Source: Hormiphora californensis (lineage: Eukaryota; Animalia; Ctenophora). From it: DNA of 64,000 nt. Positions 12,231 to 28,984 of the stretch are shown piece by piece. Under the pieces are notes generated by a model that did not search any database, was not told the origin of the DNA, and was given only the letters and a program-made list of their open reading frames with translations. Position 1 is the stretch's first letter, and each line of letters begins with the position of its first letter. Location: NCBI GenBank assembly GCA_020137815.1, contig CM035356.1, positions 7,564,001 to 7,628,000 on the forward strand, written 5' to 3'. The position numbers were made by a program, and so were the translations under genes.

Positions 12231-14561
12231 TTATCGGTCTTTAGCGGGTCCAGCCCGCTCCCTTGAAACTGGGGCCACATTTCTTTCAATGGGTGTCATT
12301 TCAGTTCCCTGGTCAACGGTCCTGACATCACTCGGACTAGTGTCCGTCATTCTATAGTCCAGGACATACAGGTACAGCGCAATCCAAACAGCCAGACTTG
12401 CTACAAACGCCAAACTAATCCAGAATATAAACCATCCAGTGTAGAACACTCCCTTACCCAGGGTAACCACTGCCATTATTGCAGCTGCCACGGCGATGGT
12501 TGTCAGGCCAATTCCGTACAGGGTCGCAAAGTTATTCCTCCCGAAATACCGTACCAGCACGACAGGGTAGAGAGAGAAGATTCCTCCACCGCCCAGGAAT
12601 AGCACCACAAATGCAATGAAGTAGAGAATCTTACCATAGAACATGGCAACATAAACAAGGACAGTCGCTATGGTGATAGCGATTGTCATGGTCAGCACCA
12701 GGCCCTCCAAATACATGAAATCCGAGATTATGCCCCACACAAACGCTCCAAGTCCCTTTGCCACACCCAGGGAACCTCCAACCTGGGCAAGGAACAAATC
12801 GTCGCGGATAAAAGACTGCCCGTAAACTTTGAACATGGTGAGACCGGTGAGTACAGGTGCAAGAGCGAATGAAAACAGAAAGTAGCACTTCCAGAATATG
12901 GGCAGTTGGAGGGATGTGGTGACTTCTAGTTCTTGTTTTGGTTCGTTTTGCCTCCTGCGAGGATTGGTAGATCAGTCAATAAAATGAGGCTAAAATTATC
13001 AAACTATTTAGAACTACGCCAAAGCTAAGATAATAAAGATCTACCAAACCTACGAAAAATTAAGATTAAATACCTGCGACGTCTAGCCCGGCTACTATTA
13101 GTTGTTTCCGTTATAATACTCTCTGTCTCCTCATCGGCATGTTGTGCATCCTCGGCATCCTCTGGTTGGCATGGATACCGAGCTAGAAATGCTATACCCA
13201 CTATCTGGACTATCGTCAGACCTATAATAGAGAGAATGAAGGTGAAGATCGTCAGACCTGTAATAGAGAGAATGAAGGTGAAAATATTTAAGTTACTCTC
13301 TCTCCGTGCCCTGCGACGGCAAATGTAAAGGAGGGATAGAACTAAGAACATAACAACTTTACAGGTAGTTTGTTATTTGTTAGAAACTGAAAAGTATTGA
13401 CCTAAGATAGCGAGAAGATACACTTTCGGAACGTTATTCAAAACACCCTCGTTCACAAAATATCGTTCCGTTTTATCGGCGTATGGAGCGTGAGAGGGCG
13501 AGACGTTGTGGGGGTTGATAATCAATGTCACTATCGGGTTTACTACTGCTGGTGCTGCAGCAAAGGCTCCATAGTTGATTCCATTTACCTGGGATGGGGG
13601 TGGTAGGGTTCAAAACCTCAAACATATCATGGACAGATGATAATAACGTGTTCTTACTCACCATGCCCTCCCATCGCGGGACCCATTTGATGGCCTCGGT
13701 GAGGGCTCCAATGGTTGCCAAGGTAACTCCAAATGCTATAAACACTGCCGATACAAAGTTTAGATAGTAGCTCATTTTGAGGGCGATGTAGCTGATAACA
13801 AAGGATAACGTGTACACTGCAGAACCAATTGCAGCTGATTGCCAACCTAGGTAACAAAATAAACAACGATTTAATGGTACTAAATAAATAAATTGACTGC
13901 TAGTTTTTTGTTACTAAAGGAGAAGGGAATAAAACTAAAAAATGTATTTTACCTCCAAGTTTTTGTGTGATAAGTCCACAAGGAATGGATGCAAAGCCGG
14001 TGAGAAGGACCCCAAAGAATATGAGAACTGATAGGTCGCTGTATCTGAGATCTGGATCTGCTCCTTCACCCCTCACTCTGGCATAGGATACCAGATACGT
14101 GACCTGGTTACCTGGGAATGTGTAACCTGGTTACCTAGGATACCAGATACGTGACCTGGTTACCTGGGAATGTGTCGGTGAAACTTGAAATCAATCAAAC
14201 GTACCATCTCTCAATATATCTCTCAATGTATCTGAACATTACTGATGGCCCTCAAATTATAGATCTAGGAAGCTAGAGATCAGCTTTATATCTAGGATAA
14301 TATCAGCTATATTTTACCTAGTGATGTTATTTATGCCTGATCCCACTTCCAACCCTCTATACTATACCTAGTGGTTTTGTTTGTGCCTCCCACTTCCAAC
14401 CTTCAGCTGGTTTACCTACCTAGTGATGTGACTGTTCCCACACTAAACTGGATCAGAGCCGACCCTATAAGGGCTACTGTCTGTCTGCATTTCAGGTTTT
14501 GACACTTTTGGGCATGTTTCTTGACCGTCCTCCACGCTCTTTCCAGCCCTGACCGGGCCAT
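12231..14561 (-). CDS. MFS transporter, oxalate:formate antiporter / monocarboxylate-carrier-like, multi-exon
   Basis: Hydrophobic TM exons: ALIGSALIQFSVGTVTSLG|NQVTYLVSY..DLRYSD, FKVYGQSFIRDDLFLAQVGG..GAFVWGIISD, GGGIFSLYPVVLVRYFGRNNFATLYG. Confidence 0.85.
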
Positions 14562-14902
14562 GTGATACCGGGCTGGAAATGTATCAAAGAACAAGATTAG
14601 ACATGATATACCGGGCACTTACAAAATCAAACAGCGATATCAAACAGGAAGCCACTAAGTTGACTACAGCTAGTGCTGCAGCACTTGTTATGTTCTAACC
14701 CTCGTTTACAAAGGGTCAATGCCGCAATAGGTTCTATACAATACACAGCTTTGATGTCACTATTTTGACCGACAGATTAATGATCGATGGGCCCAGTACA
14801 AGCAAACACAAAATTTATAGAGACACACAGATTCAGAATTACAGAGAGAGAGAGAGAGAGAGAGAAAAAGAAGAGAGAGAGAGAGAGAGAAAAAAAAGAG
14901 AG

Positions 14903-14975
<73 letters not shown>

Positions 14976-15928
14976 TAAAAAACATATGAACAGTCTCCAC
15001 CTTAGTTACTGTACCCACCCACGTGATACTGAAAGATGTGCCCGATTGACTGAACTGTTTAATTGAAGCTATTATCTCTTTGCTAACTGTATCAATAAAA
15101 ACTAATTTTCCACGGAATGACTTCCCGGTAAAGAGGTATAATCTTTCTGTAAACGTCGCCCCACCATATTGATCTACACCAGCTACACCTAGAAAGCGAC
15201 TTGTGTCTGGGTATTTTAATGGCAAATGCCTGCCTTTATTTAAATGTCTCTACACAACATGTTACGTACCATGGAATGCCATATATCCAATATAATATGT
15301 GCAAGTCGAGTTATGTAAGGAGAGTCATGTAAGGCGTGCTGATAGGTTTTTCAATTACTATGACAGAAAACAAAGAACTCCTGGCGCCCAGCTTTGTTAG
15401 AAAAGAAACAAAGTCTCAGAGCCTACACACACGCAAGATTCAGTTTGTTGACTTTATCACACATACTGAGCTAATTTTACCGTATTAAAACGTTAGTGTG
15501 TTGCACTAAAAACTAACTTTTTGATGTTTCAAACAAGGTCATTGAGTCTTGATTTTTTACAAAGATTGATCTCTATACAAACAAAGTTAGTAAATTATGT
15601 CAGCTTGATAAAATAACTTCTACCAAAACGCCTGCTTGAAAACTAATATATCACTCATATATATTTTTTGTCTCATCCTTCTTCTTCTTCTTTTCGAGTC
15701 CTATCGCTCTCTCTTTCTCTTATGTACAAAGTATATTTTTCCATTGAAACTTAATCTTCCTCGAGTTGAGGAAATCTTAATATAAACGTCGTATCATGGT
15801 TGTAAGGGGTCAACAGCTTATCATCGATGGGGAAAGACGATGAAAAGGGGTCGGAACCACACGGTCATTATATAATCGAGTTATGACCCAGAGAATATTT
15901 TCCAGATACATGTTGGTGGTGGTGGCGT

Positions 15929-18320
15929 CTACTGGATATCGTCAGGAAGGACTAGCCTAACATTCAGTTTGGGCTCAAAGTACTTCACAATCTGAAACAT
16001 ATTGTTGTATGAGAAGCAGGACCAAAATCCCTCAAATACTGAATGAAGCAATAAAGAAGTTTCATCAAAAGTTCCCTCACCCTACACAACGGCAGAGATA
16101 TAAAATAGCAGTATGATTTGGCTAAAGTAACATACGAGTAAGCAAAGAAAGGGAGGGGGGGGGGAAGGCCATTGACCAAAATCAGGGTTCCGATAGCATT
16201 TTTTGCGATGGATCCCCCTGGCCTTCTTTTTAGGGCTGGACCGAGGACCCCCAAAAAACATGTTATGTATACCTGTCGGATGGTGGGTTTGAACTTGAGG
16301 AAGATGGGATCTTCAAAGGCGTGGTTCATGTAGGATCTCAGGTGAGGGACATCATCGGGGATCTCAAAACCAGGCTTGAACAGGTTCGCTACAGACATCT
16401 TGAGACAGGGAAAAGTAAATTTTATAACGAGAATTTGTATGAACTTGATAGCCAGTTAAAAACATAACAGGTTAACAGGAGGAAACAATTAAACAATCTC
16501 ATAATAGCCAGAACGTACCAGGTTGTAGAGGGCAGGAACCATCCTAATATCCCAGAGGGTTAACCTCTTCTCCTTCATGTAGTCTCCCTCTTTACTGAAA
16601 TATAACAGAGGTCAGGATTAACACAACCCTAGTTCAAGCTCTGACAGACTCCACCCAGTATTACATAGTGGTGATGACAACATTGCACTTAACTTAATTT
16701 TCACCCGGTCAGCAAGACTATATTATAACCCTCCAAGATTTCAGTCCTAAAGACACAAGCCACAGGGGACTCAAGCGAAGGCCAATTCAAAAACTTACTT
16801 ATAAAATTGGACAAGATACAATTCAAAAACTTACTTGTGACATTGGACAAGATACTCGTCAAGTTGTCGGAATTCACTTTTCAGGTCCACCCAATCAGGG
16901 TTACTGTCATCGTAGGGTCGTACTGATTTCAGCAGACTGAGCGTCAGGTTCTTTACCGTCTTACCCCTGTGGTGTACAAGATGTTTAATTAATAATTGGG
17001 TGCATGTTCTCCAAACTGTTCCTAACAGAACAAGAATACAATCATGCTCCAATGTAAAACCAAAAACAAACCTGAATCTAGATGCGCCCATTCCACCAGC
17101 ACAAAGAAGGGGAACACGGAATTTCTTCTCAAGGGCCATCATAATCTCGGCAGAGCCAATCTTGTACTGTTCCTTGTCGTACCTAATAGATGGTGATTAA
17201 TTGTTTAGCACGGAACACATGGTGTCAAGCCACATAAAGATGAACAGGATAGGATGTCGGGAAATGAAAATCGGACGCCCTTTTCCACTGCTTAACCGTT
17301 TTGCAAGCATGTGCATTGGCCATTGTGCAATGTATATAACCTTCATAACAAAATCAAAAGTCTAATCTTACTTGGCCATTGGAAGAACTCCATCCCAGTT
17401 GTTTTTCCTGAACCACTCGGGCAAGTTTTTACTCTTCTCAGGCTCCACAATGTGCACCTGAGAAAAATCTTTAAATTACCTAAAGCACCTAAGGGCATAC
17501 GTTATTTAAAACGCTCCAGTCCTATGTATCCGTCGCTGTCAAAAACGTGTATACTAGAGGACTGCTGCAGTGCATGCCAATACAGAATATTACAGGTGCT
17601 TTTTGCACAAATCAACCTTTTATAAGCACCTTATGTGGGAATCCTTTCATTTCGAGGTAGATTTTCAGTTCCGTCGTTGTTGGATCAGCATTCACCTGGC
17701 CCTCCTCTACTCCCTCCTGAATTGGGGAGGTTGGGATTAGTCTTGCTGATGTCTGTAAGGTGTTGCAATCTGTTTGGCACATTCTGTGACCTGTTATGTG
17801 TGCTAAAGGTTTAATCTGTACTATTACTATATGTACTCGGTGTTTGTTTGGTGCATTCTGTGGTCTACAGCTATATCAAGTGTTTCTTGTTGGCTATAGG
17901 CACAGCTGCAGAGTATGCAGGTGTTTCCTGTTTGGCACAATTTGTATTTTACTGCACAGGTATAATATGGTTGTCTACTGTGCAGGTAGTTGTCGATTTG
18001 GCAGGTACAGGTTTGCCAGGTCGCTAATCTAGTTTTCAGTTCTGGCATAGCTCATAACACCCAACTATAGATAGCTATAGATGGATGGTCTAGGTCTATA
18101 GGTCACTAAAAAAAGGCCATTATAAGACAATAGAATCATATTTTTTAACAAATTACAACAGGCATATATATCTGCCCACCTTGAAGCAAACATTCAAATT
18201 CTTGGGATGAGGGTAATCGATGATTTTCTTCTTGTCAGCCCCAGCAGCACCTCTCTTGGTCCGTGCCCGCTGTTGAGCCCTAGCGTTGTAGCCGGTCCTC
18301 ATACTAATAACAGGAATCAT
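15929..18320 (-). CDS. GST-fold protein, CLIC/DHAR-like (isoform using the proximal first exon)
   Basis: Spliced peptide ...PKNLNVCFK|VNADPTTTELKIYLEMKGFPHK|VHIVEPEKSKNLPEWFRKNNWDGVLPMAK|YDKEQYKIGSAEIMMALEKKF...EFRQLDEYL...RLTLWDIRMVPALYNL...FEIPDDVPHLRSYMNHAF...PDDIQ*. Follows the CLIC/DHAR N- and C-terminal domain pattern. Confidence 0.75.
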
Positions 18321-18522
18321 GGCCGAGTTGTACAGGACGAGGCAGTGTAACGCAGTGTAACACAAGGCAGTGTAACACACACAAACAATAGAGCAACAAT
18401 AAAGAAGAGGAGGGAAATTAGAATTATAATCAAGTTATGTGTAGTTAAGTGTGTGTGTGGTGGGCGGGTAATTAATATAGTAGCGAGTTGTGGGTTCGTT
18501 ACCTCTTGTAGAATTAGAGGTA

Positions 18523-19257
18523 CAGTCGGACCCCGATTTACCGGGCCCCGATTTACCGGGACCCCGATTTACCGGGAGGATTTCTTTCCCCCGATTTTTT
18601 TGGAAAATTTTCGAAGTTTGGCCGGTTGGTAAACTTGTATTTGCAATTCGCTAGGTCTAATGGGGATCACGTATCGGTTCGTTTCGAACCGTCTAATTAG
18701 CGACAGGGCACGTGATAAGATGCACCGATTCGAAACACGATTCGAACGTGGCTGGTATACCTTAGAAAAATTTCATAACTTTTTTTTGCAAAATTTTACA
18801 GAATCATTGTCAATGCTTTGATCGATGCTCCCCGTAAATTTTCAGAGAAAAAGTTATTTTGAAACTTTGATACTTCCTGACCCCGCTTAAGGTGCCCAGA
18901 TTCGGCATGGTATCACGTATCGGGTCGTTTCGAACCGTCTAATTAGCGGCAGGACATGCGATAAGATGCACCGATTCGAAACACGATTCGGACTCGGTCG
19001 GGGTGGTTTACCTTAGAAAAAGTTTTTACATTTTTTTTTTGAATTTTTTAAATTTTCTATTTCTAATGACATAAGCAATGCAATGATCATATTGTCATCA
19101 ATATATGTATACTATACAGTTAGAGGTGTCTTGGTATAGAATTTTGGACAAAGTAGGATTTATGGGTCAAATATGCTCTACCCCGATATACCGGGCACCC
19201 CGATTTACCGGGCAAAATGGCTTCCCCCGAGAATCCCGGTAAATCGGGGTCCGACTG
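18523..19257. mobile_element. Tc1/mariner (pogo-like) MITE
   Basis: TA|CAGTCGGACCCCGATTTACCGGG ... CCCGGTAAATCGGGGTCCGACTG|TA, with an internal direct repeat. Confidence 0.88.
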
Positions 19258-19492
19258 TATATACAGTGTGTGAGAATGGGGAACCGGAAAACGGCAGAGG
19301 AAGTTTAAAATTTAAGCGAGATTTCCAATTGTCACAATAACAGTTCAGGCCAGTAAGGATAATGAAATAATGCGAATTTGAAATGTTTCAATTTTCATAG
19401 ATTCCACGTGTGTATGGGAAGCAGGGTGAGGGTTGTGAAAGAGTTCTTTGTAAGCTAGCACTCCCCCTTGTCAACACGATAGTAAAACATTG

Positions 19493-19556
<64 letters not shown>

Positions 19557-19796
19557 TCTACCTCTATCTCTATCTCTCCCCTTACTTTCTCAATTCTTAC
19601 ATCATATTCTATCCTTTATTTATTTCTGAATTTACTTTAAGCCTTCTAGAACCTAGTCCGTGAATTTCTAGATCTAACTTTTAAATTGAATATTACGTTG
19701 ATGACAGGCCTTGAATATGTGAATACAAGCTGAGCCTGCTGCACTACGAATCTGCAGAACGATTTTTGATTTGGAGAAGCTGAGAGACAAGTGTGT

Positions 19797-19842
<46 letters not shown>

Positions 19843-20714
19843 AAGATAAAGAAAGATAGAGAAAGATAGAGAGATAAAGAGAGATACGGAGAATCCAGAC
19901 TTTTGGTCCTGTTGACACACCAATTACAATACCGGTCTAGCGACCAAGACAGAAGGAGAGTGCCTTTTTAGAGATGACGAGGCTTGACACACACACTGAT
20001 GTTATGTAGCTTGAGGAAGTTTTTCGTCTAAAGGTCAACTGAAAATAACAGTTTGTGTCTCACTATGTAAGGTCGAAGCGCAAAGCAAAGAAGTTGACTG
20101 AAAGTAGTCTGCAACATGACTGTCTCTGTGCGAAGGGAGAGAGTGATAGATTATTGGGAGGGAGAGAGAGAGAGAGAGAGAGATAGGGAAAATAAAAGGG
20201 AAGAGTCATGTAGTAGTTGTGCGAGTGCTAAATTGATTTAAATTTTGGGGGAAAACCACGCACACGGAATATATATTATTTCCTGTCACAGAGGTTTCAA
20301 CCACCGCGAATGGCACTGGTATTCTAGAACCGAGCCAGAGATGGAGAGAGGGAGAGAGAGTTGGAGAGAGAGAGAGAGAGAGTGGAATAGAAAATTAAAT
20401 AAATAGAGATTGGTTGAAATACGCCAGATATTCTGGTGGTGGGTACGCTGACTGTTGCCTGACGAAGTTGTAGGATAAATTAATAAAAATAGAAGCACCA
20501 TCAGTATTTCCACACCAAATGGCATTCTTCAAAACTCGGTGTATGAAATTCCTAGTGAGCACCGATTTACAGTACAGCTGGAGATATGGTGTGTCACGTG
20601 ATACCCAAATATGGTGGTCACTTGGTGCCCAAATATGGTATGTCACGTGATGGTAACAATAGTTACATGCCAGTTATCAAAACACAAGGATTGTTTCTAT
20701 CCCAAATTACATAC

Positions 20715-20825
20715 CCGGTAGCAAAAGACCAGATTTCTCGGGTGGGGATAGTCGATTTTTGTGCTTTTTGCACCAGTCTTCTTGGCAGCCCGTGTTGCCG
20801 CTCTTCTATTGTAACCCAGCCTCAT
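20715..20825 (-). CDS. Candidate alternative first exon B of the GST-fold gene
   Basis: MRLGYNRRAATRAAKKTGAKSTKIDYPHPRNLVFCYR followed by a phase-0 GTATGT donor; homologous to the exon at 18180-18320. Confidence 0.75.
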
Positions 20826-21399
20826 TGTCAACTAGTCCAGTGTCAGGATACTAGATCAGCTGTTATAGCTTGAATACTGGTGTTTTATAGTTGGTATGGA
20901 GAACAACTAGCCAAAGTAGAGTGTAGAACAACTAGACAAATGCAAAGTATAGTCCAGGATATAACTAGACAGTATAGTAGTAAATAACAAAGTTATACTG
21001 ATGTACAAAAGGAAGCTATACGAATCCACGCCAAAAGCTGAGTCACTATCAAGACCGAGGGAACACATGTAATAACTCAGAGAGCGAGACAGTGATAGAG
21101 GCTTGTGCGAAAACTTGAAATTTGGTCCTCATTAGAGCAGCTATAAATAGACCATGTCTGAAACTCATATTGACACCCGGCCGAGTGTACCGGAACGACA
21201 GGTGAAAGTTAACCGGAAAGATGGGTGAAACACACGGAAGTGGGGAAATCAGTTACAGCCGGAATTCCAGGTTGGAACGCTCCATATCCTGCACTCTAAG
21301 TTTGTAACAAAATTAACAAATAGTATTATCCGCAATGAGACGTGAAATAAACCCGCCACAGACGGGGATTTGAGGCGGTGTTTAGCAAAACGGGAAAGG

Positions 21400-21987
<588 letters not shown>

Positions 21988-22481
21988 AGATAGGCGAGCT
22001 CGACCAGATGCAAAAACAAATGGAAACGTGCCGGGAAGGTTTAATTAATTTAGCAGCACATCACAACGGAGTGTTACCGCTGAACAGGGCGTGAGGTTGC
22101 GGGCAAAAAATACGTGCGACTTTCCCGACCACCTTATAAGACACACATGGCGGGGTAGAGAGATAGGGAGAGAAAGATAAAGAAAGATAATGAACTGAAC
22201 GATAAAGATAGGGGTACTGGTGAACAAGGAACTGACCGTAGAATTAAAATTCAAAGATGGAACTGTATGCCCAACAAGCACACATGGTACTGTGAGAGTG
22301 TTGAAAGGATAAATTCAGTACCAGCTAAGGCTGGATAAATTCAGCGTTTGTACCAGCGATGGATATTCAGAGTTTCTTGAAAATTAACGGGAACTGATAG
22401 CTGGATAAAGTTAAAAACATGGATGCTGTAGGAATCAGGAGACAGACATGCTCTACATTATATCTTGTTGACAGATATATA

Positions 22482-23451
22482 CGGTGGCAGATTCCGGCCA
22501 AGTGTTTTTTTAGTCAAGTGAAATATTTTTGCTTGAAGTTTTATAAAAAATTTATTTCAAAATAAAAATAAACATGTCGTTAAAATTATTGGCCGGAATC
22601 TGCCACGCGAGTGGCAGATCTCGGCCAAGATTCTAAAAAAACCTTGGCCAGAATCTGCCAATCACGTGGCAGATTCCGGCCAACAAACTGAAACTTACTT
22701 ATATCAAAGCGAAAACCGCTGTACCCGACTAATTTTGATACTCTGAATCACGTAAGCAACTTTTCCAATCCCTCAGAGGTCGGGAAAGTATCCTAATTGA
22801 GCATAATAGGGTCTAATTGACCCCACTTACAACTTTTCACCTGGAAACGATAGACGCTTATGTGAAGGCACTTTTCCGACTAATTTTGATAAGCTGAATC
22901 ACGTAAGCTATTTTTCAAAACCCCCCGAGGTCGGGAAAGTGCCCTAATTGAGCAATTAAGGCCAATTAGACCTAATTATACTTAATTAGGCCAAATTCCC
23001 GACCTCGGAGGGCTTGGAAAAGTTGCTTACGTGATTCAGCGTATCAAAATTAGTCGGAAAAGTGCCGTCACATAAGCGTCTATCGTTTCCAGGTGAAAAG
23101 TTGTAAGTGGGGTCAATTAGACCCTATTATGCTCAATTAGGACACTTTCCCGACCTCTGAGGGATTGGAAAAGTTGCTTACGTGATTCAGCGTATCAAAA
23201 TTAGTCGGGTACAGCGGTTTTCGCTTTGATATAAGTAAGTTTCAGTTTGTTGGCCGGAATCTGCCACGTGATTGGCAGATTCTGGCCAAGGTTTTTTTAG
23301 AATCTTGGCCGAGATCTGCCACTCGCGTGGCAGATTCCGGCCAATAATTTTAACGACATGTTTATTTTTATTTTGAAATAAAATTTTTATAAAACTTCAA
23401 ACAAAAATATTTCATTTGATTGAAAAAACTCTTGGCCGGAATCTGCCACCG
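22482..23451. mobile_element. Foldback-like palindromic MITE with TA target duplication
   Basis: TA|CGGTGGCAGATTCCGGCCAAG ... CTTGGCCGGAATCTGCCACCG|TA. Arms are near-perfect inverted copies almost to the centre (about 22960). Confidence 0.88.
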
Positions 23452-23727
23452 TAGATATATCAGTCGATGATTTGTGTACATTGAAGCAGATGAAGTTATA
23501 CTACATGATTATACTGATCCATTTCAAATGGTTCCGGTGCAACCCCTCCTCGTTTTGTTTTAGCCTTGGCTGAGAATGAACAACGATACCAAGTAACTTA
23601 TTATACCACAGACCATTGGAAAGCGCTACAGTCCTATCGTAGAGGGGACTGTAGCGTATACGCCAACACAAACCACTGTGATGTTATCAACCCTAATTTC
23701 TGCAGTATGAAAAAACAAAGCACTAAC

Positions 23728-23910
23728 CTCCTTGTTCGGTTTCCTGTATACAATCTGGAGATTCTTGGGACACTTATAACCCAACATCTTAGCAGCCTTG
23801 GCGTCCTTGCATCCCGCAGCTAACAGCGCCTTATTGGTGTTCTTACTACTGCTGCTCTTGGAACTCTTAGCAGCACCCCGCCGGGCTGCACCCGTATGCA
23901 TCGCAAACAT
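23728..23910 (-). CDS. Candidate alternative first exon C of the GST-fold gene
   Basis: MFAMHTGAARRGAAK...LGYKCPKNLQIVYRKPNKE followed by a phase-0 GTTAGT donor. Confidence 0.65.
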
Positions 23911-25807
23911 AACTACCACACGAACTACTAGACAAGGGCTGTGCAATTAAAAGTACGTACTAAACGAGCCTGCAACAAGAAATATGCGGCGGCGGGCTGA
24001 GTTTTAGAAAGAAAAACAGCTGGTATGCAACGTGTTTGTAGTAGCAGCGAGGCTCCTTGTGTCGACAGAAGCCTCTCCTTCTCTCTCTCGCATTCCATGT
24101 TAATGGTTTTATTCAGTTATAAAGGACAAGCAGTATTCAACTTAGTATCCTTTTTGGTGGTAGTAGGGGGAAACAAGGTGTAAACATGTTGACAAAATTA
24201 CAGATGACCTAATATTTCAAGGAAGTTCAGGGCCGGAACATATAATTCGAGATTATGTCAACTATCAGTTTATATTCCAAACTGTATTATTAATACATTT
24301 TATATTTTCCGAAGAAAGCAAACGCAGAGGAAGGTGTTCTCATCCAAGAAGAAAACTGTTCATTGAAGAAAAGTTTGAGCGGCTCAATAAGAGAAGCTCA
24401 AAAAGAGAAGTTCAAACGCTTTATATCAAATCTTGCCTTTTCATTAGACTGTCAACGCTTAATTACATGGTCTACCTGGTCTACATTCACTTTTTCTGCA
24501 AGATACCTTCGGTGTTGTGGTTCCTCCGGTTGCTCCTTCATAAAACCAATTATAGTACTTACCATGACAACAGGAACAATTTCACTGACTTTTCTGGTTT
24601 TACTTACGGTCAGTCCGGAACTATTTCACTCAATTGATGATGATTGCTTGTTTCTTTCTGTCATAGTCAGTATTGAATTTTTACTGGGTAATGCATTTTT
24701 ATCTCCCTCTCTCTCTCTCAGTCTCTCTCTCATGTGTCAAGAGGAAGTGCTATTCCATTGTGGTCAAGGGTATTTTAACCGTTTCTCTAATACCCCCACA
24801 AAAAACTTGTTTCTTGGGCTAGGTGTGACGTGAGTGAGCAATTTGGGGCGTTGCTATTTTAATTAAATGGACAACAAATTAATTGTATGGCCACGGTGGC
24901 ACGGTAGGCCACGTGAACTGTGAAATTTGCGGTTGTGTTTGAGAAATGAAAAGGATAGCAACATAGAAAAAAAGAGAGAACACCAAAAACCTAGAATGCG
25001 AAATTTAGCCGCTTTTATACGGCCTTCCCCCCGCCACATGGCCACAGGGAAACCAGGAAAAGTGTGTCAATATAGTAATGAAGGAGCTTTATGTGCTATA
25101 ATATGATTAGTCATGCGCATGCTAGCAGTAATATATAAAGTGTGAGCTGTAATAGAAGCAGGGGGAGTTTGGGCGCTCTAAATACTATTTGGCCGGATTC
25201 GAACACAGTTCTTGCCTTCCGAAGAATGAAGAGGGCAAGAATAAGAGAAATTAAGAAACTTGAAGCAGTATATGTACCGTTAGTGTGTAATTTTGATCTA
25301 CCGAATTCACATAAAACTTAGGGTTTTTTTTGTAACAAATATCCTTGCTGATCTTTACAAGTTCCTAAATCATTTTAACTGCATAATTGTTCACGATAAT
25401 ATGGTAGGTTTAAGATCATACATTGCAAAAAGGGGATTCAGGCAAGGAAATAGCTAGTGCAGAAACTAATGACGTGATGACAAGGTCGGTGTATGCATTA
25501 TCCAGAACAAACAAACGGACAAACAAATGTGCCCCACCCTGATATTTAACGGACGATGCTGACAGTCACACTTCAAGTTACACTTCCAGTTACACTTCCA
25601 TGTTCACACTTCAAGTCACACTTCAAGTCACACTCCTTTTTTTGTGACAGCATACCAAACTTGAACAAATTATAGAAATCACTTGAAAGAGCTGAACGCT
25701 GGTAGACGTGTGGCATTGTGTCTGCGCTATATGCGACGGAACAAAAAATGAACTATGAACAATCCAAGATATAATCCACGATACAGCTTCTAAAAAAGAT
25801 AACTCAC

Positions 25808-25963
25808 ATCAATATCAATGAGGGCGTGGTAGCATATCTCCAGATCACGAGGATAGGGGTAGTCAGGTTTTGGGGGACCTGGATTAGCCGCCGCCCTCAG
25901 TTGTTCCCTCTTCTTTATCTCATAGCTGCTGTCTCTCCGCTGCTGGTTCATGTACGACCTCAT
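25808..25963 (-). CDS. Candidate alternative first exon D of the GST-fold gene
   Basis: MRSYMNQQRR...KPDYPYPRDLEICYHALIDID followed by a phase-0 GTGAGT donor. Confidence 0.7.
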
Positions 25964-27813: not shown

Positions 27814-28984
27814 TTTTGGCTGGAAAATTTAATGGTGGACAATACAGCAATGAAAATAAATAAATATTAAACATACTGAGTCCTGCCCCGTGCGAAGAGA
27901 TCGATACTCGTAAAGATAGACATTTAAAACAGGAAGATGATCTCCACAAGCTTGTGGGGCAAAATTTGGTGAGTTCTAGATGCACTCTATCACACCTTTT
28001 CTCAAAATATACTTTCTCTCTGGGTGCTCGTGTCTCAGTTCGTTAAGAGTTTTAATGGATTTCCTCCTTTCAACCCTCTCTTCAAAACTCCTGTCAGGCT
28101 CGATATAAACACGGCTATAACTGCCAGACTTTCTCAACTCACACGCCTTTCTCAAAAGAACAAGGAGACTGTCTCTAGACTGCAATGTCACTTTAACAGG
28201 CCTAACCTTACCCTCAACTTTAGATCCCAACCTGATACAGCTGTCCAGAAGTGGCTTCTCGTTCAGTTCCTCTAACAGAGACGTCACCGTGGCATCCACA
28301 GTACCTCCAACAGGTTCCTCAGGCAGCCCAAAAATCATCAGATTCTTGGAGCGGTCCTCTTGGTCAGCTCTTGGGACTGATGCTTTACTGACAGCTTCCT
28401 GGATTTTCATCGGAGCTAATGCGGCACTACAGTTCTGCGTCAAGATAGCTGAATAGCTCTTCAGGTCACGCTGTACAGACTTAGTCAAAGCTGCAGACTC
28501 AACATTTCGAATTTCATCTTTCAGTTGGATAACTTGATCTTGAAGATCAATTATCCTACGGTGGGTATCAGCCAGCTCCTTCTGTAGGCTGTTCCTCTCG
28601 TCCTCCCCATCAACACTGGAAGTTGACGGTCTCCTACTCCCCAGGGGGAATGCAAGATCAAAAAGTAGATTGCATGACTCCGCCAGAAAATACGCTAGGT
28701 TGTTCTTCATGTACTTCCTCCCATTAAATGTTTCAATACTGATATCAGGAATAGGCATTCCTCTACCTATCAGATCGTGCAGCTCATCTGGAGTAAACTT
28801 ATTCATTGAACCAGGCGATGTGTTGTTACGAATCATGTTATACAGCTTCGTAACTTTGTCAGGGGCAGGGTCTTTGGGATTCCACTCCATCATGATGTTA
28901 CGGTGATCCTCGAACGGTGAGACAATTGCAAGCAGAGATAACGATCAGAGCGATAAAAATCGCTCGCAGCAACAGCAATGTGAT

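What the first reader, a model, noticed from the sequence alone, without database searches (positions are those of the whole stretch)
17630..25963. Array of four homologous variable first exons upstream of one constant GST/CLIC-like body (UGT1/protocadherin-like layout)
Seen: four ATG-initiated minus-strand exons at 18320-18180, 20825-20715, 23910-23728 and 25963-25808 each encode a basic leader ending in a shared motif: DYPHPKNLNVCFK, DYPHPRNLVFCYR, GYKCPKNLQIVYRKPNKE, DYPYPRDLEICYHALIDID. All end in phase-0 GT donors compatible with the phase-0 exon at 17695 (VNADPTTT). I found no copies of the downstream GST exons between them. Inference: the motif is beta-strand 1 of the thioredoxin-like domain, so promoter choice would swap the targeting leader, beta-1 and the loop length next to the active-site helix.
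Basis: partly seen in the sequence, partly recalled or inferred. Interest (0 to 1): 0.85.

Follow-up and report, generated by a model that had tools for sequence, protein, structure and literature searches.

The report
Four alternative 5' exons, one gene
A comb-jelly gene for a cysteine-less relative of dehydroascorbate reductase/CLIC proteins carries four interchangeable start exons, and related comb jellies have matching start exons joined one at a time to the same protein body, so the array is old and most likely makes four versions that differ at the N-terminus.

Summary
Four ATG-started minus-strand exons (A 18320-18180, B 20825-20715, C 23910-23728, D 25963-25808) carry the only four copies of the motif in the window. 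Each ends at a phase-0 GT donor upstream of a body that looks single-copy in the genome (two exons tested).

Two boundaries need correcting. The shared acceptor is 17716, not 17695, because orthologues keep EGxxEGx before ADP. Exon A most likely starts at the second ATG, 18302.

No RNA from this species could be obtained. The comparative evidence is strong instead:
- Bolinopsis microptera LOC134818955 has four RefSeq isoforms with a 100% identical body and four different leaders. Three match types A, B and C here. The fourth is only weakly D-like.
- Three other ctenophore groups show two leaders on one body, taken from transcript-sized contigs.

The body belongs to the DHAR/CLIC branch of the GST superfamily but lacks the catalytic Cys. 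The variable exon supplies the leader, strand beta-1 and the length of the following loop.

"Promoter choice" is not shown. This genome has 639 spliced-leader copies, and two orthologous isoform mRNAs begin with a spliced leader. These exons are therefore trans-splice acceptor exons, not true first exons.

It is a new member of a known kind, of moderate interest.

The parts
25808..25963 (-). Variable 5' exon D (52 aa; leader near neutral, net +1; YPYP variant; 7 extra residues after beta-1). AG acceptor directly before the ATG (25965-25964), GTGAGT donor.
   Evidence: (orthologous D-type leaders P0010 and P0029, E about 1e-8)
23728..23910 (-). Variable 5' exon C (61 aa; net +12; G-Y-K-C-P variant of the motif; 5 extra residues after beta-1). 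GTTAGT donor.
   Evidence: (vs the Bolinopsis X1 leader, z 6.5, 0 of 300 shuffles)
20715..20825 (-). Variable 5' exon B (37 aa; net +9). AG 6 nt before the ATG, in-frame stop 3 codons upstream, GTATGT donor.
   Evidence: (vs Bolinopsis X4, z 19)
18180..18320 (-). The conserved start is the second ATG at 18302 (41 aa, net +9), with an AG acceptor at 18305-18304. GTGGGC donor.
   Evidence: (vs Bolinopsis X2, z 22)
17630..17716 (-). First constant exon (29 aa: EGVEEGQ, then NADPTTT in place of the CPF(C/S) active-site motif, then helix alpha-1).
17372..17457 (-). Constant exon 3 (beta-2 / alpha-2 region)
17072..17182 (-). Constant exon 4
16835..16966 (-). Constant exon 5 (one match in the genome search)
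16519..16594 (-). Constant exon 6
16273..16398 (-). Constant exon 7 (one match in the genome search)
15929..15991 (-). Last coding exon, ending in the TAG stop

Best explanation
One ctenophore gene (most likely Hormiphora californensis) encodes a roughly 255-280 aa, cysteine-less member of the DHAR/CLIC branch of the GST superfamily.

Its 5' end is an array of four old, homologous, mutually exclusive coding exons in the order D, C, B, A. Each has its own ATG and a phase-0 GT donor. Each is cis-spliced to the same acceptor at 17716. The result is four proteins with an identical body.

The variable exon supplies three things:
- a leader that is strongly basic in A, B and C and near neutral in D;
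- a conserved (D)YPHP cap plus strand beta-1 of the thioredoxin-like domain, including the Lys/Arg that ends the strand;
- the length of the beta-1/alpha-1 loop.

Shown: the sequence anatomy; orthologous exon types A, B, C and D in other ctenophores; one leader per mRNA or protein in those species; the fold family.

Inferred:
- That all four exons are used in this species.
- That each exon is an SL trans-splice acceptor exon. The most economical reading is that each is transcribed from its own start region, because an upstream donor would otherwise cis-splice into it.
- That the leaders change localisation or partners of a non-catalytic binding or scaffold protein.
For: - Anatomy and specificity of the four exons.
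- Body colinear with orthologues and apparently single-copy (two exons tested).
- Bolinopsis microptera LOC134818955 isoforms X1-X4 have a 100% identical body and four different leaders. X2 scores best with A (127), X4 with B (106), X1 with C (54).
- Three more groups pair one body (99-100% identical) with two leaders, from about 1-1.5 kb contigs: P0004/P0025, P0029/P0027, P0020/P0022.
- Intron-less contigs L009 (D-type) and L011 (B-type) join the leader directly to the EGxxEG exon and begin with SL-like sequence.
- The genome holds 639 copies of the published H. californensis spliced leader against 0 in the control. The paper reports the SL on at least 56% of Iso-Seq reads.
- AG acceptors lie 0, 1 and 6 nt before the D, A (M7) and B start codons.
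- Family: the profile matches plant DHAR at E 1.5e-11 over positions 31-254, beta-1 included, then CLICs. Foldseek puts DHAR then CLIC on top.
Against: - No transcript evidence from this species. The only run offered (X1) held nothing of the gene.
- For the C-type, the only joined evidence is a RefSeq model whose RNA support I could not inspect.
- Bolinopsis X3 is only weakly D-like (z 2.4).
- A leader tree is poorly resolved.
- The AlphaFold model is poor over the N-terminal domain (pLDDT below 50 for residues 35-55). The beta-1 assignment therefore rests on the sequence-profile alignment to DHAR.
- Pfam GST_N/GST_C hits fall below the gathering thresholds, except GST_N_3 in one orthologue.
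- Promoters and the function of the leaders are untested.
Confidence: 0.78

Rival explanations
1. There is one promoter (upstream of D, or read-through from the same-strand CNG channel gene upstream) and one long primary transcript. The isoform is chosen by which of the four acceptors receives the spliced leader, not by promoter choice.
For: - SL trans-splicing is pervasive in this genome.
- Orthologous B-type and D-type mRNAs start with an SL.
- AG acceptors sit just before the start codons.
- The neighbouring genes lie on the same strand.
Against: From established knowledge of trans-splicing in nematodes, an acceptor with an upstream donor in the same transcript is normally cis-spliced. A single transcript should therefore give concatenated leaders, yet none of about 30 orthologous proteins has two leaders. 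The 2.3-3 kb spacers leave room for separate start regions. There is no direct data either way.
Confidence: 0.15
2. In this species only some of the exons (for example A and B) are used. C and/or D are unused relics, or they splice to local terminal exons as micro-genes.
For: No RNA evidence in this species. C is the most divergent copy, and C-D similarity is at chance level.
Against: - All four keep an ATG, an open frame of 37-61 codons, the motif and a canonical phase-0 donor.
- The flanks no longer align.
- C-type and D-type exons are recognisably conserved in distant ctenophores.
- The tested body exons each match only once in the genome search.
Confidence: 0.06
3. The shared motif is a chance or low-complexity resemblance, and there is no array.
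For: None beyond the short length of the motif.
Against: The motif has four of four window occurrences in one 8 kb stretch on one strand, each in an ATG-to-GT exon. Orthologue leaders hit only these four places. The z-scores are 5-22.
Confidence: 0.01

Closest known systems
UGT1A locus and clustered protocadherins (variable first exons spliced to constant exons)
   Same: It is a tandem array of homologous 5' exons. Each has its own start codon and donor. One is used per mRNA, joined to a single shared acceptor and constant body.
   Different: - There are only four exons, and they are short (37-61 aa).
- They encode a leader plus one beta-strand of a domain that is completed by the constant exons, not a whole domain.
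- Unlike UGT1A and Pcdh variable exons, these have 3' splice acceptors and (in orthologues) receive a trans-spliced leader, so they are not the true first exon.
- A per-exon promoter is not shown.
Plant dehydroascorbate reductases (DHAR; PDB 5mye, 2n5f, 5d9w, 5el8)
   Same: They are the best sequence-profile and fold matches over the whole length. This includes beta-1 (ALEICVK), the cis-Pro strand and the C-terminal helical domain.
   Different: - The catalytic Cys of the CPFC motif is absent (ADPFT in orthologues, NADPTT here).
- Identity is about 22-26%.
- From my own knowledge, plants use separate DHAR genes with or without transit peptides. Here one gene carries four leaders.
Metazoan CLIC proteins (CLIC1-6, EXC-4, Drosophila Clic)
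   Same: They have the same GST-like fold and are the next-best matches. From my own knowledge, not tested here, CLIC5A/5B differ by alternative first exons.
   Different: Scores are much weaker than to DHAR (E 1e-3 against 1e-11). There is no CLIC active-site Cys. Membership in the CLIC family proper is not shown.
Alternative SL-trans-spliced 5' exons as in nematodes
   Same: The 5' coding exons are preceded by an AG acceptor and capped by a spliced leader.
   Different: Here four homologous, mutually exclusive coding exons share one downstream acceptor. This requires upstream donors to skip the intervening SL acceptors.

Membership tests
Variable-first-exon gene array (UGT1A / clustered protocadherin type) | Tandem homologous 5' exons upstream of one set of constant exons, with no copies of the constant exons between them | tested here: met
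   the two body exons tested match once each in the genome search
Variable-first-exon gene array (UGT1A / clustered protocadherin type) | Each variable exon has its own start codon and a donor in phase with one shared acceptor | tested here: met
   the shared acceptor is corrected to 17716
Variable-first-exon gene array (UGT1A / clustered protocadherin type) | Each mature mRNA holds exactly one variable exon joined to the constant exons | tested here: inconclusive
   Met in orthologues: Bolinopsis X1-X4, three other groups, and contigs L009 and L011. No RNA of this species was available.
Variable-first-exon gene array (UGT1A / clustered protocadherin type) | Each variable exon has its own promoter and is the true first exon (no 3' acceptor) | tested here: not met
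   Orthologous B-type and D-type mRNAs start with a spliced leader, and AG acceptors precede the ATGs here. The promoters themselves are not testable with these tools.
GST superfamily, DHAR/CLIC branch | Thioredoxin-like N-domain plus all-helical C-domain, alignable over the full length | tested here: met
   Profile against PDB: DHAR E 1.5e-11 over positions 31-254. Foldseek: DHAR 3e-6, TM about 0.67 on the target. Pfam GST_N_2, GST_N_3 and GST_C_5 score mostly below their cut-offs.
GST superfamily, DHAR/CLIC branch | Catalytic Cys in the CPF(C/S) motif at the start of helix alpha-1 | tested here: not met
   The motif reads ADPFT in orthologues and NADPTT here. The DHAR Cys20 is left unmatched in the alignment.
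SL trans-spliced mRNA | The genome carries SL genes, and the mRNA 5' end is the SL joined at an AG acceptor | tested here: inconclusive
   639 SL copies in this genome. SL-like 5' ends on orthologous isoform contigs. Acceptors are present here. The SL on this gene's own mRNAs was not observed.

The most novel reading that the evidence does not exclude
The array is an ancient ctenophore-wide system. The four trans-splice acceptor exons are each invisible to the cis donors of the exons upstream, so that D, C and B donors skip up to three usable acceptors. One cysteine-less DHAR/CLIC-like scaffold is thereby sent to different compartments or partners by swapping its leader, its first beta-strand and a ligand-site Lys. 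That would imply an undescribed rule separating cis-splice from trans-splice acceptors.
Probability: 0.2. Interest if true: 0.65.

Novelty: new member of a known kind. Interest (0 to 1): 0.45.

Why it matters
The array shows that a UGT1/protocadherin-style layout of variable 5' exons exists in a ctenophore. All four exon types recur in other ctenophore sequences, three of them in Bolinopsis microptera, so the array is old.

It acts on an unusual unit. The swapped piece is a leader plus the first strand of a fold that the constant exons complete.

It sits in an organism that trans-splices most of its mRNAs. That raises a concrete and testable question: how do upstream donors avoid the SL acceptors of the downstream alternative exons?

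It also gives a name to a ctenophore-restricted family that is currently 'uncharacterized': a Cys-less DHAR/CLIC-like protein.

No paper in the searched library describes any of this. RefSeq only lists unnamed isoforms.

Tried and rejected
- The look-up of sequencing runs on the whole 9.8 kb stretch listed only one run, X1, with a word share of 0.00.
- Read laying of X1 on 15900-21899 gave only hits to a repeat at 18521-18601 and 19221-19251. There were no gene reads, joints or loose ends at the exons.
- Exon-by-exon Pfam gave nothing.
- A region search with the Bolinopsis C-type leader found no further C-type proteins, because only cluster representatives are searched.
- A profile search found no relatives outside ctenophores.
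- The leader tree was largely unresolved, with 1 of 19 inner branches starred.
- AlphaFold did not model the N-domain with confidence.
- No SL copy lies in the window.
- The 5' exon of contig L010 has no counterpart in the window.
- The fourth genome hit of the strict motif (L004, on contig C6) was looked at in one frame only and taken as chance, given 2 hits in the control.
All searches used single exons by reference or database orthologues.
Full report
**Observation**

- The motif [DG]Y[PK]xP[KR][ND]L occurs four times in the six-frame translation of the whole 64 kb window, and all four are in these exons.
- A stricter back-translated DNA pattern has four hits in the 110.7 Mb genome, against two for the reversed control. 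Three of the four are exons A, B and D.
- The similarity covers whole leaders, not only the motif. It includes a shared start, M-R-x-G-Y-N.
- Z-scores against shuffles are 19.9 (A-B), 11.3 (B-D), 8.4 (A-D) and about 5.5 (A-C, B-C). C-D is at chance level on its own.
- Each exon ends after a full codon at a GT donor: GTGGGC, GTATGT, GTTAGT and GTGAGT.
- The DNA flanks do not align, so the copies are old.
- Body exons E5 and E7 each have one match in the genome search.

**Gene model**

Seven constant exons, from 17716-17630 down to 15991-15929, have consistent phases and end in a stop. They are colinear with ctenophore orthologues.

- The shared acceptor is the AG at 17718-17717, behind a pyrimidine-rich tract, so the exon starts at 17716. 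Every orthologue keeps EGxxEGx before (S/C)ADP. The window encodes EGVEEGQ there, and tblastn alignments run through it. Both sites are phase 0.
- Exon A's conserved start is the second ATG at 18302. The first ATG at 18320 lies upstream of an AG acceptor at 18305-18304.

Searches used single exons by reference, or database orthologues.

**Whose genome**

A 42-aa exon found three relatives among 1.8 billion representatives. One is a 176-aa Pleurobrachia bachei protein, 100% identical over that exon.

The genome has 45 contigs and 110.7 Mb. It carries 639 copies of the spliced leader published for Hormiphora californensis, against 0 in the control. It is that species or one very near it.

**Is the array used?**

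Direct RNA evidence for this species could not be obtained.
- My single run search used too long a stretch and listed one run, which held nothing of the gene.

The comparative evidence is strong.
- Bolinopsis microptera LOC134818955 has RefSeq isoforms X1-X4 with a 100% identical body from EGVEEGE onward and four different leaders.
- By best score, X2 is the A-type (127, z 22), X4 the B-type (106, z 19) and X1 the C-type (54, z 6.5). The C-type pair shares KAAK(L/M)LG(F/Y)K.P.
- X3 is only weakly D-like (z 2.4).
- Clear D-types exist in other species: P0010, P0020 and P0029. P0029 shares the first eight residues, MRSYMNQQ, with exon D here.
- Three further groups pair one body (99-100% identical) with two leaders, from about 1-1.5 kb contigs in Logan and JGI: P0004/P0025, P0029/P0027 and P0020/P0022.
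- Two JGI contigs are intron-less and join a D-type leader (L009) or a B-type leader (L011) directly to the EGxxEG exon.

The reasoning runs as follows. The exon types recur in several other ctenophores, the flanks have diverged beyond alignment, and all four exons here keep their ATG, open frame, motif and donor. I therefore take all four to be under selection and in use. This is an inference.

**Not true first exons**

The H. californensis genome paper reports a trans-spliced leader on at least 56% of Iso-Seq reads.
- L009 begins with a sequence that matches this leader and ends in TTTGAG, 33 nt before the ATG.
- L011 begins with a related leader joined 1 nt before the ATG.
- In the window, AG acceptors lie 0 nt before the D start codon, 1 nt before A's (M7) and 6 nt before B's. 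Several lie 14-59 nt before C's.

The exons are therefore most likely SL acceptor exons, and 'promoter choice' is unproven.

From what is known of trans-splicing in nematodes (my knowledge), an acceptor with a donor upstream in the same RNA is normally cis-spliced. No orthologue carries two leaders. Separate start regions in the 2.3-3 kb spacers are therefore the more economical reading, but it is untested. How the D, C and B donors skip the downstream acceptors is an open question.

**What the protein is**

- Pfam gives only sub-threshold GST_N and GST_C hits, with GST_N_3 just reaching its cut-off in one orthologue.
- A profile of nine orthologues matches plant dehydroascorbate reductases over positions 31-254 at E 1.5e-11. 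CLICs and GST omega follow at E 1e-3 or weaker.
- Foldseek on an AlphaFold model gives the same order. The model has mean pLDDT 67.6, with a good C-domain and a poor N-domain.
- In the profile alignment the end of the variable exon (xLEIxFK) lies on ALEICVK, residues 2-8 of DHAR. That is strand beta-1 of the thioredoxin-like domain; the strand assignment comes from my knowledge of DHAR and CLIC structures.
- The catalytic Cys of CPFC is missing. The motif reads ADPFT in orthologues and NADPTT here. The protein is unlikely to be a thiol-dependent reductase.
- No relative outside ctenophores was found, within the limits of the word-based search.

**What the swap changes**

- Leaders A, B and C are strongly basic: net +9 to +12, pI 10.4-11.0, and no acidic residue in the first 22-35 positions.
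- Leader D is near neutral: net +1, pI 7.9.
- The final Lys/Arg of beta-1 aligns with Lys8 of DHAR. As I recall, that is a ligand-site residue. It is K in A, R in B and C, and H in D.
- C and D add 5 and 7 residues to the beta-1/alpha-1 loop, as Bolinopsis X2 and the D-types of other species also do.

Different localisation or partners is the likeliest consequence. This is an inference with nothing tested.

**Novelty**

Searches for ctenophore with 'alternative first exon', and for ctenophore with 'chloride intracellular channel', returned no papers. A broader CLIC/DHAR evolution search returned nothing relevant. RefSeq lists the Bolinopsis isoforms only as 'uncharacterized'.

The kind (an array of variable 5' exons) is well known. 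This is a new, old and well-conserved member, with the twist of SL trans-splicing. Earlier notes of this scan on the same window gave the lead that the genome is a comb jelly's.

Noticed in passing
window 22475-23458: A near-perfect 984-bp palindrome (two 478-nt arms, 96% complementary, 28 nt apart) lies in the spacer between exons C and B. It looks like a foldback or TIR element.
   Followed up: no
window 21400-22000: A long GA/TC microsatellite switches strand at about 21493, forming 90-107 nt inverted repeats. Further GA tracts lie at 19490-19890 and 20130-20390.
   Followed up: no
window 18520-19250: An element bounded by inverted CCGGTAAATCGGGG-type repeats, with an internal 85-nt direct repeat (18663 and 18909). 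Its ends were the only part of the stretch hit by contigs of run X1, at high word depth.
   Followed up: no
L010:1-122: In another ctenophore, a contig with an SL-like 5' end carries a 76-nt 5' exon joined to the EGxxEG exon. That exon has no in-frame ATG and a short upstream ORF. It may be a fifth, non-coding 5' exon or a truncated isoform. It has no counterpart in this window.
   Followed up: partly
window 27976-28893 (-): An uninterrupted 305-aa ORF lies between exon D and the upstream CNG channel gene. It has no Pfam family; the only hit is a weak coiled-coil-like match to ATG16.
   Followed up: partly
window 12233-14590 (-): A same-strand gene starts about 1.3 kb downstream of the stop codon, with long hydrophobic exons that look like a multi-pass membrane protein. 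With the CNG gene upstream, that makes three consecutive genes on the minus strand.
   Followed up: no
G000:C6:1221814-1221836 (L004): This is the only other genome hit of the strict motif pattern (D-Y-P-S-P-N-D-L/F). It was looked at in one frame only and is probably chance, since the control gave 2 hits.
   Followed up: partly
protein P0013 (Mnemiopsis leidyi KAL5269319.1): This Mnemiopsis gene model replaces the leader, beta-1 and alpha-1 with an unrelated 13-residue start. It is probably a mis-annotated 5' end of the orthologue.
   Followed up: no
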